Part shown: one piece after another, positions 1 to 61,119 of the stretch
How the letters are laid out: each line of letters begins with the position of its first letter
Numbering within the stretch: the first letter of the stretch is position 1
Assembly: GCF_001194135.2 (NCBI RefSeq)
Contig: NC_068984.1
Location: 76,345,448 to 76,409,447 of the forward strand
DNA from: Octopus bimaculoides
Lineage: Eukaryota
DNA: 64,000 nt
Reading direction: 5' to 3'
The notes under the pieces: model-generated
Told to the model about the DNA's origin: nothing
Seen by the model: the letters and a program-made list of their open reading frames with translations, nothing else
Database searches by the model: none
Program-made: the position numbers and the translations under genes

Positions 1-450
1 CAATGTAGCTTGTCCTTTTTTATAAAATGCTAAGATGTGACATGAGAGAGAGATTTGGCTTCTATTTCTGGCTAGTCAAGTAATCCAATAATTGAAAGAA
101 GTAAAAGATAAAAGGAACTAAGTCTTAACAAGAACAGCTTGGCCTCATCCTTCAGCAATTAATAACACAAGTATTTGTCATATATTGGAATGAATTCTAT
201 TGTTTATATATCTGCTCCTTTAAAAAAAATAAATGATAAAAAAAGAATGAAATAACTAACAATAGTCGTGTATTTGTGCATATGAAAGAAATTTATATTT
301 TTTTAAAGTTTAAGCTGAAATTAATCAAATGTAAGTTGCTTTGAGAACAATAATTTCTTGGAAATGTCATCCCACCATCTGAAGTATTCTGTAAACAATT
401 TGGGGGGAGGGGATGAGTCAATTACATTGACACCAGTGTTCAACTGGTAC

Positions 451-488
<38 letters not shown>

Positions 489-726
489 ACAAAGCCACTG
501 ATTTTAGGAGGGAGAGGTTAGTTGATGATGTCAACTGGTTTTTTATTTTATCGACCTTGAAGTTTACAACTTTGTGTTCATTTGTTTCATGATTCTTCCA
601 TTAATACTTCAGCTTGTACATCTGTGTTCAACTAGTGATGTCATAAGACTAAAACTTGTCTGAAGTTGTCTCCCATACTTGTCTTAACTAATTCCCCATC
701 CCACTTTTCAATATAATTATTTCTAG

Positions 727-782
727 ATAGGTTTTTAATGATCCCTACATTTAATGTTAACACTAAATTAGCTTTTGTCTAT
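727..782 (+). CDS. Candidate upstream exon of the NEF1-like gene (RFLMIPTFNVNTKLAFVY)
   Basis: ttatttctag acceptor and tat|gtaagt donor; only one frame is open (phase 1 in, phase 0 out). Compatible with exon 4140 directly, but not with 3056 without an intervening exon. Confidence 0.4.
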
Positions 783-898
783 GTAAGTGTTTGGTATACA
801 TCAATCTGATTTTCACAACTCCCAGAGATGAACAAACCATGGTTAACATTCCCATGGTGAACAGTCAGTAGTGAACATTCTACAATGAATGCCCAATG

Positions 899-1113
899 GT
901 TAACTGTTTTCATTCCAACATGCCTCCCCTGGTTCTGTGATGCAAACTCTTTGTTTTAAAGTGATCTAAATTAAAATTTCTCATTAAAACTTCATGTTAA
1001 TTTATGTTCTATGCATTTGCTTAATAAGGACAAAGTTATTTTACTATATTCTTCATTATTTTCAAAATTATTTGAAATAACGTGGGCATATTTCAACAAA
1101 AATTTGGTAACAA
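899..1113. mobile_element. Degenerate TTAA-type MITE (reverse copy of the 34905 family)
   Basis: Reverse-complement similarity to 34909-35139, ending ...ggtaacaaaagagtgaa. Confidence 0.55.
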
Positions 1114-1264
1114 AAGAGTGAATACCCAGAGATGAACACTCTGCAATAAAACTTAATCTCTATTTGCATAGCTTTCAGAATCACAACCTGAATTTGTTAC
1201 TGCTAGAAGTGGCAGCCCATCTTCCTCAAAGGACACTTCCATTTTGTAAAATAGTCTAAGCCAG

Positions 1265-1460
1265 GCAGTGGATTTACAGACTTGCTAGAGCAACAAGCCA
1301 ACCACATTGCAGTACTAAGTTGCACACTTTCATGTTCTGAGTTCAAACTCTGCCTTTCATCCTTTTGTGGGTCAATAAAATATATCATATAGTGGGATTG
1401 GTTTAATCAATTATATTACCTACTCTCCCCTAAAATGTGTAACTTTGTGCTTATATCAGA
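1265..1460 (+). mobile_element. tRNA-derived SINE family B, degenerate
   Basis: gttctgagttcaaactctgcctttcatcctttt core shared with the 17818 and 40624 copies. Confidence 0.6.
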
Positions 1461-2323
1461 AATTATAATTATCATCATTGCTTCACTGAAGACCGGGTTT
1501 TTGAATTCACATGGCAATAACATCTGTTAAAAAACATTCCTGGCAATAATATCTGTTAAATCTTTCTTCAGAACTTCTTTTAACTTCAGTTAGGCCCTCT
1601 ATAGTAAAAATGTTATTTTAATAACAGCAGAACATGGCCGGGGGGGGGGGGNNNNNNNNNNAAAGGATATTGAAGTTGAGAGGTTTCAACTGTCTAAATC
1701 CACTTTTGATCTTCAGCCTTTATGTTGTCAATCTACTTGCTAAAAATTGCTGCCAAGCTTCTGTCCTGTAACACAGCCTTGATACATTTAAAAAAGAGGA
1801 AGGGCAAGCACATATTGGATAAAGCATCCTCAATGAGACAAGACTAAAGAAGCCCTCACAACCCCACACTTTCTCTGCTCATGTGCCAACCACTTTACTG
1901 GCTGCATTTTTCGTGACATCAGCACAAGTGAAGCTGTCTCATTCACCAAATCATGCTTTGGGGAGTGTTGTTTCACAGCACCAGTATGGGGAAGGGTATC
2001 TTGTATGCAGTAAATGTTGAGTACTCAGTAACCTAAGATATGTGAACTGACATAAGGAATAGAAGGTAGAGCAATAGCAGTAGAAGAACCAGAAGTGAGT
2101 AGCTGAGAATGGCTAGAGTGTAAATGCAGAGAGTACTCAATAACCTACAGCATCTACATTTGCTCAGATGGTTGAGGTAGAGAAGAGGGGAAGGAGTGAT
2201 AATATCACAAGGACCAGAGTGGCTGGGTGAAAGGAGCAAGAGTATGATGGAAAAGACAGAGGTGGTGGTTATTTGGTCAGTAGGGGTTTGATTGGCAATA
2301 ACCTTAGCCTTTGACAACAGGAA

Positions 2324-2990
2324 TGGGATCTTGTTCAAAATGGGGGCACCAGTTTTCATTTATGTTTTATGTAGTGTTTTTGGTACCGAAAGACTTTCAA
2401 ACTTCGTATACTTATCTATTTTGTGTTATAGAACAGAAAAAAATTTTTGTATTCGAATTTATTTCATGTAAAAAATTGTCTTATTTCGATAATTTCAACC
2501 AATCACTGACAAGTATTCAGCTGTTTACACTTACTCCTTTGGCAATTTAAGCGGTGTAAAGCGTATTTAATCTCCATTACTTCTGACATTTTGCAGAGAG
2601 GCAACACGCATGTGTTCGTTTTCCCTAACCGACTTGTTCCTTCCCTCAAAAACCAGGCCTTGTGCCTATAATAGAAAGGTTTATTAGCTACTGCCAATAT
2701 GCTTCAGCCATTTTTTGTCAAGGAAATAATAATTTTATCACCGCCAGAATCGTTTGAGAATCGTTTGTTTACGTAGTCAGCACTTAATTTTTACGGCTGA
2801 GTGGACGTCAGTCATTAGTTAAAATTACAGAAATACGACAATTTTAACATGAAATAACTTGCGATGTACGTTTTTTTGTTAAGAAGACTAAGAGAAAAAG
2901 ATGTTTTATATGACACATTCTACCAGTGTCCCAAGTTTCAAAGTGTTTCGTTAAGAAAATACTGGTGCCCCTGTTTTGAACAAGATCCCA
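2324..2990. mobile_element. Putative MITE with 30-bp terminal inverted repeats
   Basis: TGGGATCTTGTTCAAAATGGGGGCACCAGT (2324-2353) versus the reverse complement of 2961-2990: 28/30 identical. Interior retains CpG; no TSD found. Confidence 0.6.
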
Positions 2991-3055
2991 AGAGTGTTCT
3001 GGATGACAGATAAAGCTTAGGATTTTTTTTTTCATGTATTGTTTGACTAATATAG

Positions 3056-3107
3056 ACTCCTCCTCAGTATTTGTGTACAACTGTTTGTCAACTATTCTAC
3101 TCTTCAG
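3056..3107 (+). CDS. Candidate upstream exon (LLLSICVQLFVNYSTLQ)
   Basis: Poly-T tract then aatatag acceptor; cag|gtgttt donor; phase 2 in, phase 0 out; joins in frame to VEMVF. Confidence 0.4.
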
Positions 3108-3143
3108 GTGTTTTTAATCCTCTTTATTTTTCAGTTGTATGTT

Positions 3144-3362
3144 TAACCTTTTAGCATTTAAACCAGCCAAAATATTCTATCCATTTTATGTTCAAACTGG
3201 CCAGATCCAGCCTCTCACACCTACCCTACACTATCATTCTAAAAATAAGCAATCACATCATTGAAATCTTAAAGCTACAAGATAATGCATGTTTAACTAA
3301 AAAGAATATGAATAAATGATCAATACATTTAACAGAGTAATATGAATGCTAAAGGTTTAACA
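3144..3362. mobile_element. piggyBac-like MITE (TTAACC(C)TTTAGCATT...AATGCTAAAGG(G)TTAA type)
   Basis: Degenerate TIRs with TTAA at both ends; a related partial copy lies at about 16615-16790. Confidence 0.6.
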
Positions 3363-4139
3363 TTATAATAAATTACCTTTTTTTTTATGTTTGTAAACAC
3401 TAATTTTCTAATGTAACCTCTCTTCTCTTCAAAAGTACAAGTGTATTCTCCACATTAAAGTGTCACTCACATATCCGAGGTATATGGTGCAGTTGCTGTT
3501 ACAAATGCAAATATTCCAGGTCACACTCTAAAATTACACTGTTCATTTGTTTGATTGCTGCACCCTCACTCAGAAATAAGCTACAACTCATTGATACATT
3601 GTGTCCCCTGGTATCACTACTACTGCTACTACTACTACTGCTACTACTACTACTACTGCTACTACTTACAATGCTAACTTCTATATTAGAATTGTTGAAA
3701 ATTATTCTCTACTCCTGTCTAATCCTACCTCATTGAACTACCTTGCCTCTTCTTGACCCTGTTATGTTTGCTCCTCACACAAAGCACCTTCACTAACACT
3801 TGAAAAACTTTACCTAAATAGTTATTCCCAGAACAATAAAAGCAGCGAAACACCATTCCTTGGAACACTTTACTTGCTTACATCTTTTCTATAACCATTC
3901 AACAATAAGCAGTTCAAACTTAACAACAACTGCGTCAACTTAACCTGTCTTTGAGCGACTGCATATTTATTGATATTGCTTTTCCTCGTCAAGCTATGAC
4001 ACTCTACTCCTTGTATGGCATTATTTTCTCTTTTGCTTTTACTCTACACCCTCCTCCTCCTCTTCTTCCTCCTCTTCTTCTTCCTCCTCCTCTTCCTCCT
4101 CCTCCTTATTATTATTCCTGAGACTTGTTTATTTAACAG

Positions 4140-40026
<35,887 letters not shown>

Positions 40027-40032
40027 AGCAGC

Positions 40033-40330
40033 AATAAAATCTATCTGTGATATGAAGAGGTGAAAGATTACTTAACCTTATTTTATGGATAATAGCCATT
40101 GTAAATGGGAATGTGTGACAGAGATAAAATATAAATATCTATTTTTGTGAAAAAAAGAACTTTATGTCACACATTAATCCAATTGATATATTGGAGTTGA
40201 TTGATTCTTTGGATAACTTTTAATCCCAGTTACTACAGTAAGGTCCTACAAAGATTTTTAAAAAAATGAGAAGAGAGATGGAAAAGATATTTAAAAAGTA
40301 CAGTTATTTATTATTATTGTTAACAATAAA
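40033..40330 (+). terminator. Candidate polyadenylation signals (AATAAA at 40033-40038 and 40325-40330)
   Basis: Hexamers downstream of the stop codon; common by chance in AT-rich DNA. Confidence 0.3.
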
Positions 40331-46069: not shown

Positions 46070-47265
46070 TGTTTTTGCACAACTTCTAACGCTGGAGATG
46101 TACTACGGTGCCAGCTGTTCACTGCCAGTGAACTAAGGTAACACCCCTTATTTTTCGAGGCCCATCCGGAGTATTCGAGCGGTTCCAAGCAGCGCTGTTT
46201 TCTGCAAGTGCTCCATCCTTAATGCAGCCCCTATTTGTCCCATGTATTTCTCAAGATTTTTGCTCACTGTTCCCAGGGCTCCGACAATTATTAGTACTAC
46301 TACCACTATTTTCATCGACCACAACTGCTTAACCACCCAAGCTAACCTGTCATATTTATCGACTTTTCTTTCTTCCTTATCGCATACCTTGTCAGCTGGG
46401 CATGCTATATCTATGATCCAGCATCGTTTGCTTTTTTCTCAATTAACATTATGTCTGGTTTCCTATTCTCTATCTCATGATCGCACTGAATCATAAAATC
46501 CTACAGGATCTTTGCATTATCATTTTCGATTATGCCTTCAGGTTTTTGTTCGTACCACTTTTTTGCTCTGTCAAGTCCGTACTTGTTACAAAGTGTCCAA
46601 TGAACAATCCTTGCTATATTGTCATGACGTCTCTTATATTCTTTCGGGGCTAGTGGCGTATATTGACTGGTAATATGCCTTACAATTTCACCATTTTGTC
46701 CACAAATTCTGCACTTATCACTTTCTGATGTATTGTGTATTCTGTATTTGATGTAATTGGTTCTTAATGCTTGCTCTTGGGCGGCACAGATTAAAGCCTC
46801 TGTTTCCGGTTTTATATCACTTTTAGTCATCCATAGCCATCTTTTTTCTCTGTCTGACTTATCTTCAACATCACTATGAAATTGTCCATATATTCTTTTC
46901 TTTACCCACCTATTTTCAGTTTCATTCATTCTCAAGTCCTTGTACAGCGCTTTATCTTTGCAATCTTCCATCCTACTCAAGCCTGACCTTCCTACTTCTA
47001 ATATTAGCGGTTCTGTGGCATTTTTTACATACCATGCTATGTTGTTTTCTTCTGCTCTAACGCTGTGTTTGTATCCAATCAGCCCTCTTCCCACTCTTTT
47101 TGTTGGTACATACAATCTGTCTGTGTCACTTTTTGGGTGGAGTGTCCCATATCTAGTCAGCTACTTCCTTATCTTTCTGTCTAAGCTGTTTAGTTCGTCT
47201 ACTGTCCATGCAATTACCCCTGCTCCATATCTATGTAGGGAAACCGCCCAGGTGTTGATAGCTTC
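46070..47265 (-). mobile_element. 5'-truncated R4/Dong-clade non-LTR retrotransposon (RT C-terminus, CCHC region, restriction-like endonuclease)
   Basis: NKIEAINTWAV...LHPKSDTDRLYVP..GRGL; AAQEQALRTNY; CRICG...HITS...YKRRHDNIARIVHW; RKPDIML..IIDIACP..KVDKY; KTALLGTARILR. Flanked by (ATT/ATC)n; few lesions. Confidence 0.9.
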
Positions 47266-51954: not shown

Positions 51955-52375
51955 AGAGATGGCTGTGTGGTGAGAAGTTTGCTTTGCAACATCATTCTGG
52001 GTTCAGTCCCACTGCATGGAATCTTTGCAAAGTATTTTCTACTATAGCTCTAGGCCAACCAAAGCCAGTTGAGTAGATTTGGTAGATAGAAACTAAAAGA
52101 AGGTCATCATGTATGTTTGTGTGTATGTCTGTATGTGTGTGTGTGTCTGTATGTGTGTGTGTCTGTATGTGTGTGTGTCTTTGTCCCCTTCCACTGCTTG
52201 ACAACTAGTGTTGGTTTGATTACACTCCTATAACTTAGTGGTCTGACAAAAGAAACTGATATAATAAGTACCAGGCTTAAAAAAATAAAAGTACTATGGT
52301 CAATTTGTCCGACTAAAACCCTTCAAGGCAGTGTTCCAGCATGGCAACAGTCTAATGATTGAAACAAGAGAAAGA
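51955..52375 (+). mobile_element. SINE family A, diverged copy
   Basis: tggctgtgtggtgagaagtttg head to tgaaacaagagaaaga tail. Confidence 0.8.
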
Positions 52376-54494: not shown

Positions 54495-55491
54495 ATTTTC
54501 TTCCTCGATGCTCCTGGAGGGACAGGAAAAACATTTCTTACAAAGCTTCTCCCTGCAGAAGTTAGGCAGCATCAGGACATTGCAGTAGCTGTAGCCTCCT
54601 CTGGGATTGCAGCTACTTTGTTACCCGGCAGCAGGACAGCACACTCGACTTTTAAACTCCCTCTCAATTTAGCAACATCCGACATGCCTTCATGCAACAT
54701 CAACAAAAGCTCAGATCAGGGGCAGGTACTTCAAAGGTGTCATCTAATTGTCTGGGATGAGTGCACCATGGCTCACAAGGGAGCTTTGGAAGCACTAGAT
54801 AGAGACCTGAGAGACATCCGAGACTGTCAGGCTCCAATTGGAGGTGTAACGCTTCTGCTGTCAGGTAATTTCAGGAAAACTCTTCCTGTCATTCCAAAAG
54901 GCACTAGAGCAGATGAGGTCCATGCATGCCTAAAGTCCTCAACCTTGTGGTATCATGTTACCATCCTCAGTCTTACCACTAACATGGGAGCTCAGCTGCA
55001 CAGCGACCAAATGTCCACAAAATTTGCACAAGACATTTTGACACTTGGTGATGGCAAGGTGCCTCTCGACGCTGCAGGACAAATGGAAGTGTGACCATTT
55101 TCCTCTGTTGTTAATTCTGTAGATTACCTCAAACACAAAGTCTTTCCCAGCTTCACAGAAAACAACAAAATCACAATTGGCCCTCAATAGGGGATGGGTG
55201 TCTTAACTTCCACATTTTAGAGCTCCATGACTTCCATTTTTCAGGAGCAAAATCCTTTTAACAGGTTCCATAAGACTGGAATTTTGGAATCTGTGCATAA
55301 AGATCAGTAGTATGGGATACATGTGTCATAATTAGAATTTTTTTACAGTATGTAAAGAGAGAAAGAACCCTCATCTGCAATTTTGATGAAATTCGAATCA
55401 TAGGTATTCCAGTTCATTACAGAAAATATAACAGAAAAGTCTAATTCTTCCTATTGCATGTAACATGGGCAATGCCGGGTATCTCTGCTAG
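54495..55491 (+). mobile_element. Internally deleted Helitron: PIF1-family helicase fragment plus 3' terminus
   Basis: Open frame 54495-55094: FFLDAPGGTGKTFL (Walker A), AVASSGIAATLL..RTAHSTFKLP, LIVWDECTM (Walker B), GGVTLLLSGNFRKTLPVIP. Degenerate hairpin and CTAG at 55488-55491. Confidence 0.88.
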
Positions 55492-60650: not shown

Positions 60651-61012
60651 CTCTTTTACTTCTTTCAGTCATTTGACTGCAGCCATGCTGGAGCATCGCC
60701 TTTAGTTGAACAAATCAACCCTAAGACTTATTTTTTGTAAGCCTAGTACTTATTTTATCAGACTCTTTTTGCTGAACTGCTAATTTACAGGGACATAAAC
60801 ACACCAACATCAGTTGCCAAGTGATGGTAGGAGGAAAACACAGACACACAAATATATATATATACGACAGGTTTCTTTCAGTTTCCATCTACCAAGTCCA
60901 CTCACAAGGCTTTGGTCAGTCCGAGGCTATAGTAGAAGACACTTGCCTAAGGTGCCACACAGTGGGACTGAACCCAGAACCATGTGGTTGGGAAGCAAGC
61001 TTCTTACCACAC
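60651..61012 (-). mobile_element. SINE family A
   Basis: Same landmarks as 8603-9046. Confidence 0.85.
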
Positions 61013-61119
61013 ATATTTTTATTTCTATTATTATTTAGAAGAAGCAACAGAGTGACTCAAGGGCCAAGAGTTTTATGCATGAAACGTTCAGTCCTTGACT
61101 ACCTCTGTTGATTCTGTTA

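What the first reader, a model, noticed from the sequence alone, without database searches (positions are those of the whole stretch)
727..40026. Intact cephalopod-type gene for a NEF1 (No Exine Formation 1)-like giant polytopic membrane protein
Seen: 13 exons with canonical splice sites and chained phases give 683 stop-free aa, nearly all transmembrane, across about 36 kb of TE-filled introns, so the gene looks intact. From memory of Arabidopsis NEF1 (a ~1100-aa membrane protein needed for pollen exine and lipid accumulation), colinear similarity runs throughout: SLLHSFW..PW; EILLF...Y....LFSGL..L..L.RL....K; SDITG.IL..TGL...L...IQP; PILGNIA; LQKD...NKNQTVP; TTP....W..LW; PLN..LG..GI. Inference: an uncharacterised animal member of a family functionally known only from plants, possibly a lipid-handling membrane protein. 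The intron-rich native structure argues against contamination or recent transfer.
Basis: partly seen in the sequence, partly recalled or inferred. Interest (0 to 1): 0.75.

Follow-up and report, generated by a model that had tools for sequence, protein, structure and literature searches.

The report
Octopus homologue of plant NEF1
The window holds the last 13 exons (about three quarters) of an Octopus bimaculoides gene, already annotated as "uncharacterized protein LOC106878824", whose roughly 30-helix membrane protein is a true full-length relative of the plant pollen-wall protein NEF1, so this "plant" family is in fact shared with many marine invertebrates.

Summary
Thirteen + strand exons between 4140 and 40026 chain in frame to a TGA stop. 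Moving one acceptor 6 nt (13745 instead of 13739) gives 681 aa, identical at 681/681 to residues 233-913 of RefSeq XP_052823597.1 (Octopus bimaculoides LOC106878824).

All four N gaps lie in introns and no coding residue is missing. The segment at 727-782 has no counterpart in any orthologue, and no annotation I looked at uses it. The first ~250 codons lie outside the window, so "intact" is shown only for the 3' 73% of the gene.

The NEF1 interpretation is supported. A profile of 15 animal proteins matches a profile of 12 plant NEF1 proteins with 99.8% probability, E 3e-30, over 842 columns, and 29 columns are invariant. Relatives occur in cephalopods, bivalves, gastropods, annelids, a brachiopod and a starfish, all unnamed.

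Gene structure and a tree argue for vertical descent. All 12 in-window introns are shared with the scallop gene, including a U12-type intron.

No Pfam, PDB or Foldseek match reveals the fold. The function (most likely transporter-like lipid handling) is inferred only from the plant mutant.

The parts
4140..4218 (+). Exon 1 in the window (79 nt; O. sinensis residues 252-278, [27 protein letters not shown])
   Evidence: AG|..|GTAAGT. The tblastn match is 100% to the Octopus models. The scallop exon is also 79 nt.
10155..10330 (+). Exon 2 (176 nt; residues 278-336)
   Evidence: The scallop exon is 176 nt.
12117..12193 (+). Exon 3 (77 nt; residues 337-362, ...[16 protein letters not shown])
   Evidence: The scallop exon is 77 nt. 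The exon ends at the U12-type donor.
12194..13744 (+). U12-type intron. The 5' splice site is GTATCCTTT (12194-12202). A branch-site-like TCCTTTAC lies at 13728-13735, 10 nt before the 3' end. The termini are GT...AT. The intron contains N gap 13081-13424.
   Evidence: The scallop has a textbook AT-AC U12 intron at the same position and phase.
13745..13887 (+). Exon 4 (143 nt; residues 362-410). The alternative canonical CAG acceptor would start the exon at 13739.
Evidence: Starting at 13745 gives 681/681 identity to RefSeq and the same 143-nt length as the scallop exon.
19598..19694 (+). Exon 5 (97 nt; residues 410-442, [10 protein letters not shown]...LFSGL...)
   Evidence: The scallop exon is 97 nt.
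21909..22113 (+). Exon 6 (205 nt; residues 442-510)
   Evidence: The scallop exon is 205 nt.
22904..23018 (+). Exon 7 (115 nt; residues 511-549, ...QPSLSDIT-G)
   Evidence: The scallop exon is 115 nt.
29502..29649 (+). Exon 8 (148 nt; residues 549-598, ...TGL...IQPSWSVSW)
   Evidence: The scallop exon is 148 nt.
31306..31453 (+). Exon 9 (148 nt; residues 598-647)
32110..32246 (+). Exon 10 (137 nt; residues 648-693)
34479..34635 (+). Exon 11 (157 nt; residues 693-745)
   Evidence: The scallop exon is 157 nt.
37205..37339 (+). Exon 12 (135 nt; residues 746-790, ...LPILGNIAA...)
39598..40026 (+). Last exon (429 nt; residues 791-932 plus TGA stop at 40024-40026; LQKD...NKNQTVP...TTPVY...MPLN). An AATAAA signal lies at 40033.
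   Evidence: 60 relatives were found with this exon alone, the best at 78% identity and aligned to the C-terminus. Also.

Best explanation
Window 4140-40026 (+ strand) is the 3' three quarters of Octopus bimaculoides LOC106878824. This is a normal, vertically inherited, intron-rich nuclear gene. It encodes a protein of about 932 aa that is almost entirely membrane-embedded, with about 30 predicted helices, no soluble domain, and an acidic N-terminal tail. The protein belongs to the same family as plant NO EXINE FORMATION 1 (NEF1, At5g13390).

Shown here:
- the exon chain;
- identity to the RefSeq protein;
- full-length profile homology to plant NEF1, with 29 invariant columns (for example D77, E151, K464, E687, N766, D804, and the prolines of the QP, TxP and PLN motifs);
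- orthologues across molluscs, annelids, a brachiopod and a starfish;
- complete conservation of intron positions with scallop, including a U12-type intron.

Inferred, not shown: how the protein works.
- My best guess (about 0.35) is that it acts as a transporter or translocator of a hydrophobic (lipid or sterol-ester-like) substrate across or between endomembranes. The conserved acidic, basic and amide residues at helix ends would form the binding path. This rests only on the lipid-accumulation defect of the Arabidopsis nef1 mutant and on the all-membrane architecture.
- A membrane-embedded enzyme is less likely (about 0.15).
- A channel or scaffold role is less likely (about 0.2).

Because animals have no plastids, the ancestral role cannot be plastid-specific.
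For: - Gene model: 13 exons, 12 introns, 681/681 identity to XP_052823597.1 and 673/681 to O. sinensis.
- Expression of the cephalopod orthologue: a 3173-nt RNA-derived contig carries an uninterrupted 932-aa ORF.
- NEF1 homology: E 9e-33; 99.6%, E 8e-24, 847 columns; 99.84%, E 3.3e-30, 842 columns. The plant hit is a bona fide NEF1, because it has 297 plant relatives, many of which UniRef or NCBI names 'No exine formation 1'.
- Taxa.
- Vertical descent: an NJ tree recovers Mollusca, Cephalopoda and Gastropoda at 100% and Bivalvia at 91%. All 12 intron positions and phases are shared with Pecten. The U12 intron is conserved.
- Architecture: AlphaFold2 models are all-helical with about 30 helices, pLDDT 59-66, pTM 0.51-0.53.
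- Plant function: PMC3220415 and PMC12346373, citing Ariizumi et al. 2004.
Against: - No transporter, enzyme or channel fold was recognised. Foldseek's best hit had E 0.12 and TM below 0.2, and the models are of only moderate confidence.
- There is no Pfam or NCBIfam domain, no sequence relative of solved structure, and no internal repeat of the kind common in transporters.
- Plant NEF1 is described as a plastid membrane protein. According to PMC3220415 this assignment is tentative. A plastid location cannot apply in an animal.
- The 5' quarter of the gene is outside the window. Residues ~188-251 are missing or replaced in the O. bimaculoides models, so intactness of the whole gene in this species is not shown.
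- I did not examine any Octopus RNA data directly.
Confidence: 0.85

Rival explanations
1. The resemblance to NEF1 is a compositional artefact of two very hydrophobic proteins, and the octopus protein belongs to an unrelated family.
For: Identity is only about 19-21%. The last exon alone did not retrieve plant proteins at E below 1e-3. Databases give some members spurious names, such as 'NADH dehydrogenase subunit 2'.
Against: The profile-profile alignment is colinear over 842 columns, from near the N-terminus to near the C-terminus of both families, with E 3e-30. There are 29 invariant columns across 43 sequences, including polar and charged residues and prolines in shared motifs. No competing family matches.
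Confidence: 0.02
2. The animal genes derive from horizontal transfer from a plant or alga, or the sequence is contamination, rather than from ancient common descent.
For: The named relatives seen here are patchy: plants, several lophotrochozoan phyla and one echinoderm. No vertebrate, arthropod or nematode was among the 20 hits whose names I looked up.
Against: - There are twelve long, repeat-rich introns in the window, all shared in position and phase with the scallop gene, and one is U12-type.
- The tree follows molluscan classes.
- Animal-plant identity (~20%) is lower than any within-animal value.
- The cucumber gene has only 3 introns and none is shared with animals.
- No relative was found in a pattern-based scan of bacterial and archaeal genomes.
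Confidence: 0.03
3. In O. bimaculoides the gene is broken (a pseudogene or truncated gene), because the exon for residues ~188-251 is missing.
For: tblastn finds no trace of O. sinensis residues 188-251 in the window. RefSeq XP_052823597.1 fills that part with unrelated sequence, including window 3424-3520. Earlier models start at exon 1 of the window or are split.
Against: The 681 downstream codons have no stop or frameshift and differ from O. sinensis at only 8 mostly conservative positions, which is the pattern of a gene under constraint. An unread gap (1652-1661, length unknown) lies just upstream, and the window starts only 4.1 kb before the first supported exon.
Confidence: 0.07
4. The protein is a membrane-embedded enzyme (for example a glycosyl- or acyltransferase building an extracellular matrix precursor) rather than a transporter.
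For: nef1 plants lack the primexine matrix as well as plastid lipid (PMC3220415). An invariant acidic residue sits in an early loop (D77) and there are several conserved loop motifs, as in some polytopic transferases.
Against: There is no Pfam match to MBOAT, GT-C or any other transferase family. No histidine is invariant across animals and plants. Foldseek finds no such fold.
Confidence: 0.15

Closest known systems
Arabidopsis NO EXINE FORMATION 1 (NEF1, At5g13390) and its plant orthologues (about 1100-1150 aa)
   Same: Homology runs over the full length (hhalign 99.84%, E 3e-30). Both have the same all-helical polytopic architecture without soluble domains. Shared colinear motifs include F-x-x-N-x-R before helix 1, ExxLFxxxP, SSF(K/R), PS-D..G...TGL, QP, P-x-(L/V)-GN-(I/V)-A, (L/N)Q-x-D, T-x-P and (M/L)PLN.
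   Different: Identity is about 20%. The plant proteins are about 200 aa longer, through insertions in loops. The plant protein is described as a plastid membrane protein acting in the tapetum, whereas the octopus has no plastids. The cucumber gene has 3 introns and the animal genes have 18 or more, with none shared. I compared against orthologues named NEF1, not against the Arabidopsis sequence itself.
Octopus sinensis LOC115211136, O. vulgaris CAI9721200.1 and Argonauta hians GAB1597902.1 (uncharacterized proteins, 932-944 aa)
   Same: These are orthologues. Over the part in the window they are 98.8% (O. sinensis) and 88% (Argonauta) identical to the window product.
   Different: They are full-length models. 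They contain the conserved residues 188-251 that are missing from the O. bimaculoides window and RefSeq model. The O. vulgaris and Argonauta models are two residues longer at the U12-type junction.
Pecten maximus LOC117327911 (scallop orthologue, 1007 aa, 19 exons)
   Same: Exon lengths are the same or nearly the same, and all 12 intron positions and phases match. The U12-type intron is at the same site.
   Different: Protein identity is about 33%. Its U12 intron has canonical AT-AC ends and a perfect TTCCTTAAC branch site. The octopus intron has GT...AT ends and a one-mismatch branch site.
DEX1 (DEFECTIVE IN EXINE FORMATION 1)
   Same: [quoted passage not shown]
   Different: It is an unrelated protein and is mentioned only as a precedent. 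I made no sequence comparison here.

Membership tests
NEF1 (No Exine Formation 1) family | Statistically significant sequence homology to plant NEF1 over most of the length | tested here: met
   Profile search hit a protein named 'No exine formation 1' at E 9e-33. hhalign gave 99.6% and E 8e-24 over 847 columns. Profile against profile gave 99.84% and E 3.3e-30 over 842 of about 960 columns.
NEF1 (No Exine Formation 1) family | The plant comparator really is NEF1 | tested here: met
   P0088 retrieves 297 plant proteins of about 1100-1150 aa at 70-90% identity, many named 'No exine formation 1' by UniRef or NCBI. The Arabidopsis protein itself was not among the 120 rows listed, so I made no direct comparison with At5g13390.
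NEF1 (No Exine Formation 1) family | Large polytopic membrane protein (about 1000 aa, more than 20 helices) without soluble or catalytic domains | tested here: met
   The AlphaFold2 models show about 30 helices and no strands. There are no Pfam or NCBIfam domains in the octopus, starfish or plant members.
NEF1 (No Exine Formation 1) family | Shared conserved motifs in the same order | tested here: met
   29 columns are invariant across 9 animal and 34 plant sequences. The motifs are listed under Closest known systems.
NEF1 (No Exine Formation 1) family | Plastid (envelope) location | not testable with these tools
   Animals lack plastids, so this cannot hold for the octopus protein. The plant assignment comes from Ariizumi 2004 as cited in PMC3220415.
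NEF1 (No Exine Formation 1) family | Required for lipid accumulation or extracellular wall (exine) formation | not testable with these tools
   This is known only as a phenotype in the Arabidopsis nef1 mutant.
U12-type (minor spliceosome) introns, for intron 12194-13744 | 5' splice site RTATCCTTT | tested here: met
   GTATCCTTT lies exactly at the exon end defined by the orthologues. The window has only 3 such sites on both strands, against 1.7 expected by chance.
U12-type (minor spliceosome) introns, for intron 12194-13744 | Branch site TCCTTRAY about 10-15 nt upstream of the 3' splice site (consensus and spacing from my own knowledge) | tested here: inconclusive
   TCCTTTAC (one mismatch) ends 9 nt before position 13745. 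It lies only about 3-4 nt from the alternative CAG at 13738.
U12-type (minor spliceosome) introns, for intron 12194-13744 | Conservation as a U12-type intron in orthologues | tested here: met
   The scallop intron at the same position and phase reads ATATCCTTT...TTCCTTAAC-9 nt-AC.
U12-type (minor spliceosome) introns, for intron 12194-13744 | Junction seen in RNA of this species | not tested
   The junction is supported only indirectly. The RefSeq proteins of two Octopus species and a cuttlefish-type transcript read SIK|LF. The O. vulgaris model uses the CAG instead.
MBOAT / GT-C type polytopic transferases (considered) | Pfam match and an invariant catalytic His (MBOAT), or a family signature | tested here: not met
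   No Pfam hit at E up to 1. No His is among the invariant columns. There is no Foldseek match.
Known transporter folds (MFS, RND, ABC and others) (considered) | Structural or sequence match to a solved transporter | tested here: not met
   The best Foldseek matches are non-specific helical repeat proteins, with E at least 0.12 and TM no more than 0.22. PDB sequence searches were negative. The model confidence is moderate, so this result is weak evidence.

The most novel reading that the evidence does not exclude
NEF1 is not a plant invention. It is an ancient eukaryotic protein of about 30 helices with a fold not yet represented among solved structures. It was retained in plants and many marine invertebrates and lost in several major animal lineages. 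Its core job is therefore a plastid-independent membrane process, probably transport of a hydrophobic precursor in the endomembrane or secretory system. The plant 'plastid lipid / exine' role would then be either derived or mis-assigned.
Probability: 0.45. Interest if true: 0.55.

Novelty: new member of a known kind. Interest (0 to 1): 0.42.

Why it matters
NEF1 has been cited for twenty years as a "novel plant protein" of the tapetal plastid, with no known mechanism. Clear orthologues exist in molluscs, annelids, brachiopods and echinoderms. This shows that the family predates the plant-animal split and that its core function cannot depend on plastids or pollen walls. That reframes how the plant phenotype should be read. 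It also offers animal systems (oyster, sea star, squid) and a cross-kingdom set of 29 invariant residues for working out the mechanism. For genome annotation, it gives a name to a set of "uncharacterized" invertebrate proteins. It also explains why the first octopus annotation split this gene in two, at a U12-type intron.

Tried and rejected
- Word-indexed protein search with the last exon found nothing. The exhaustive HMMER search was needed instead.
- Pfam on single exons and on full-length proteins gave no family, and neither did NCBIfam.
- PDB sequence searches with two profiles gave only chance-level hits: 6bhp_A at E 0.029 and a viral VP4 at E 1.7.
- Two AlphaFold2 models (pLDDT 59.5 and 66.4) were searched with Foldseek against PDB and gave no meaningful match.
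- hhalign between quarters of the protein found no internal duplication.
- A scan of 185,579 bacterial and archaeal genomes found no relative.
- tRNA and Rfam scans of the window found nothing.
- I rejected the exon at 727-782. I first included it, giving 14 exons and 701 aa. I dropped it because it does not match the conserved orthologous residues and no annotation I looked at uses it.
- I rejected the weak donor at 12184 (CTG|GTCAAT), because it destroys the conserved PW motif.
- I rejected the canonical acceptor at 13739 as the most likely junction and prefer 13745.
- I looked for intron positions shared between the cucumber NEF1 gene and the animal genes and found none.
- Literature searches for animal NEF1 homologues found none. 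One apparent hit was DEX1, not NEF1.

Full report
**What is in the sequence.**
A word-indexed protein search with the last exon found nothing, and Pfam found nothing on single exons.

An exhaustive HMMER search with the longest exon (window 39598-40023) found 60 relatives. The best was a 932-aa protein that is 78% identical and aligned at its C-terminus. tblastn of that protein against the window showed a colinear series of matches from 4140 to 40023.

**Gene model.**
Reading the splice sites gives thirteen exons:

| Exon | Coordinates |
|---|---|
| 1 | 4140-4218 |
| 2 | 10155-10330 |
| 3 | 12117-12193 |
| 4 | 13739/13745-13887 |
| 5 | 19598-19694 |
| 6 | 21909-22113 |
| 7 | 22904-23018 |
| 8 | 29502-29649 |
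| 9 | 31306-31453 |
| 10 | 32110-32246 |
| 11 | 34479-34635 |
| 12 | 37205-37339 |
| 13 | 39598-40026 (TGA) |

With exon 4 starting at 13745 it is 681 aa. That version is identical at 681/681 positions to residues 233-913 of XP_052823597.1, "uncharacterized protein LOC106878824" of Octopus bimaculoides. It matches 673/681 positions, without gaps, in O. sinensis LOC115211136. The window is therefore O. bimaculoides, and the gene is already annotated but unnamed.

**The assembly gaps.**
Gaps 13081-13424, 16155-16164 and 21299-21485 lie inside introns 3, 4 and 5. The exons on either side are adjacent in the orthologous proteins and no residue is missing. Gap 1652-1661 lies upstream of the first supported exon.

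**What is not confirmed.**
- *The stretch 727-782.* It has AG and GTAAGT flanks and a compatible phase, and I first included it. It encodes RFLMIPTFNVNTKLAFVY. This bears no resemblance to the residues that precede VEMVF in O. sinensis (...SPIFLFFSASILSKDVSVLSTNFL), although the two octopus proteins are 98.8% identical elsewhere. tblastn finds no trace of O. sinensis residues 188-251 anywhere in the window.
- *Existing annotations.* The current RefSeq model fills that part with unrelated sequence, partly taken from window 3424-3520. The older RefSeq model starts at the methionine of VEMVF. The 2015 models are fragments. None uses 727-782.
- *Intactness.* The window holds the 3' 73% of the coding sequence. 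The start codon and about 250 codons are elsewhere. Whether the exon for residues ~188-251 exists in this species cannot be told from the window.

**A U12-type intron.**
The donor after exon 3 is AA|GTATCCTTTAAC, a perfect minor-spliceosome 5' splice site. That nine-base motif occurs only three times in the window on both strands. Upstream of exon 4 lies TCATCCTTTACCAGTGATAT|ATTATTT. The branch-site-like TCCTTTAC ends nine bases before 13745 but only about three bases before the CAG.

I mapped the exons of the scallop (Pecten maximus) orthologue on its genomic locus. Its exon lengths compare with the octopus as follows:

| Species | Lengths of the last 13 exons (nt) |
|---|---|
| Scallop | 79, 176, 77, 143, 97, 205, 115, 148, 145, 140, 157, 147, 438 |
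| Octopus | 79, 176, 77, 143, 97, 205, 115, 148, 148, 137, 157, 135, 429 |

All twelve intron positions and phases coincide. The scallop intron between the 77- and 143-nt exons is a textbook AT-AC U12 intron: cac|ATATCCTTTACA ... TTTTTCCTTAACATTATATAC|attta.

This supports the 13745 acceptor, giving a 143-nt exon. So do the two RefSeq Octopus proteins and a cuttlefish-type transcript, which read SIK|LF. The octopus intron would then have the unusual ends GT...AT. I did not see Octopus RNA reads, and the O. vulgaris model uses the CAG.

The original O. bimaculoides annotation split the gene in two at exactly this intron.

**Is it NEF1-like?**
- I aligned 15 animal proteins and searched with the profile. 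Besides cephalopod and bivalve orthologues, it retrieved a Protea protein that UniRef calls "No exine formation 1", at E 9e-33.
- That protein's own search returns 297 plant proteins of about 1100-1150 aa, many carrying that name.
- hhalign of the animal profile against the plant sequence gives 99.6% probability and E 8e-24 over 847 columns.
- Against a 12-sequence plant profile it gives 99.84% and E 3.3e-30 over 842 columns. This spans columns 56-943 of 963 in the animal profile and 87-1130 of 1151 in the plant profile.
- A joint alignment of 43 sequences has 29 invariant columns.
Examples are MPAVGNVA against [15 protein letters not shown]...RQRYFPVT against CLQKDRH...KNQTVPT, and LPLN against MPLN.
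- No other family competes: Pfam, NCBIfam and PDB sequence searches are negative.

**Distribution and descent.**
Named relatives come from:
- cephalopods: Octopus, Argonauta, Acanthosepion;
- bivalves, including Mactra, Mytilus, Ostrea and Pinctada;
- gastropods: Haliotis, Patella, Babylonia, Biomphalaria and others;
- annelids: Owenia, Capitella, Paralvinella;
- the brachiopod Lingula;
- the starfish Acanthaster.

All are "uncharacterized" or given evidently spurious names.

A neighbour-joining tree rooted on plants recovers Mollusca, Cephalopoda and Gastropoda at 100% and Bivalvia at 91%. Deeper animal nodes are weak. Together with the shared introns, this shows vertical inheritance at least since the molluscan ancestor.

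The cucumber NEF1 gene has only three introns and none is at an animal position. A pattern-based scan of bacterial and archaeal genomes found no relative.

I could not establish absence from vertebrates, arthropods or cnidarians. Only 20 of the 60 hits were looked up, and the single-exon query was too weak even to reach plants.

**Structure and mechanism.**
Two AlphaFold2 models of the O. sinensis protein are entirely helical, with about 30 helices. One used 10 aligned sequences (pLDDT 59.5, pTM 0.51) and the other 43 (pLDDT 66.4, pTM 0.53).

Foldseek against the PDB gives only non-specific helical-repeat matches, with best E 0.12 and TM below 0.22. hhalign between quarters of the protein shows no internal repeat. 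So no transporter or acyltransferase fold can be asserted, and none can be excluded given the model quality.

The only functional information is from Arabidopsis. nef1 mutants lack normal primexine and exine and accumulate less lipid in tapetal plastids. The protein is described as a plastid integral membrane protein or transporter (PMC3220415; PMC12346373, citing Ariizumi et al. 2004).

My working model, at about one chance in three, is a transporter-like handler of a hydrophobic substrate in an endomembrane. An enzyme or a channel/scaffold role are the alternatives.

**Novelty.**
I found no paper mentioning animal NEF1 homologues. One apparent hit was DEX1. The gene itself is annotated. What is new is its family assignment and the cross-kingdom extent of the family, which a routine profile search can find. 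I rate it a new member of a known kind, of moderate interest.

**Surroundings.**
- The introns and the 24 kb downstream are full of repeats. A SINE-like element has at least seven copies in both orientations.
- There are microsatellites next to every N gap.
- A PIF1-like helicase fragment lies at 54618-55094 (Pfam E 5.5e-40).
- A retrotransposon-tail ORF with a weak zf-RVT match lies at 46501-47115 on the minus strand.
- I saw no second cellular gene, although I did not examine the region beyond 40026 systematically.

Noticed in passing
window 12194-13744 (5' splice site 12194-12202; branch-site-like 13728-13735); L003 5862-6204: This is a U12-type (minor spliceosome) intron conserved between octopus and scallop at the same codon phase. 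The scallop version has textbook AT-AC ends. The octopus version has GTATCCTTT at the 5' end and, if the RefSeq junction is right, the rare ends GT...AT. A canonical CAG lies 6 nt upstream but too close to the branch site.
   Followed up: yes
window 12117-13800 (proteins P0227 and P0228): The original O. bimaculoides annotation (UniProt A0A0L8G7M3, 113 aa, and A0A0L8G6C4, 579 aa) splits this gene into two models at exactly the U12-type intron. One reads through the donor (...[10 protein letters not shown]). The other starts inside the intron ([15 protein letters not shown]...).
   Followed up: yes
window 1-4139, especially 3424-3520 and gap 1652-1661: RefSeq XP_052823597.1 replaces the conserved residues 188-251 of the octopus protein with 45 unrelated residues, part of which are translated from window 3424-3520. 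The true exon, which is 214 nt in scallop, is not in the window. It may sit in the unread gap or upstream.
   Followed up: partly
window 727-782: This is an open 56-nt segment with a good acceptor and a GTAAGT donor, in a phase compatible with exon 4140. It has no orthologous counterpart and looks like a chance pseudo-exon.
   Followed up: yes
window 8631-9060, 15942-16321 (-), 16954-17192, 27107-27227, 38344-38537 (-), 51956-52317 (-), 60668-61013: This is a SINE-like repeat family of about 300-400 bp with an internal (TA/CA)n tract, at 73-92% identity between copies, scattered in the introns and downstream in both orientations. No tRNA or Rfam match was found in the window.
   Followed up: partly
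window 54618-55094 (+): This 158-aa ORF has a strong PIF1-like helicase match (Pfam PF05970, E 5.5e-40). It is probably a Helitron-type transposon remnant.
   Followed up: partly
window 46501-47115 (-): This 204-aa ORF has a weak match, below threshold, to the zinc-binding tail of reverse transcriptases (zf-RVT, E 0.003). It is probably a non-LTR retrotransposon remnant.
   Followed up: partly
window 4940-5900 and 38539-39076 (+): These are short open segments inside introns whose translations look like reverse-transcriptase fragments (for example ...[14 protein letters not shown]...). Pfam gave no hit at E up to 0.01.
   Followed up: partly
L002 (Cucumis sativus NEF1 gene) and L003 (Pecten maximus orthologue): The cucumber NEF1 gene has only 4 exons, with introns after aa 416, in codon 607 and after aa 680. 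The scallop gene has 19 exons. None of the plant introns coincides with an animal intron in the joint alignment.
   Followed up: yes
proteins P0022, P0002, P0132, P0155, P0025: Several family members carry evidently spurious database names: Lymnaea 'NADH dehydrogenase subunit 2', Mactra 'Pleckstrin y domain-containing A member 1', and Actinidia 'Rho GTPase-activating protein' and 'Sec-independent protein translocase protein like'. The Nucella model P0025 (1541 aa) contains an inserted reverse-transcriptase-like segment and repeated blocks, probably an annotation artefact.
   Followed up: no
window 6150-6290, 23250-23420; flanks of gaps at 13081, 16155, 21299, 44821, 62187: There are long (TC)n/(GA)n tracts, and (TA)n/(CA)n microsatellites directly border most N gaps. 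This suggests the gaps are unresolved simple repeats.
   Followed up: no
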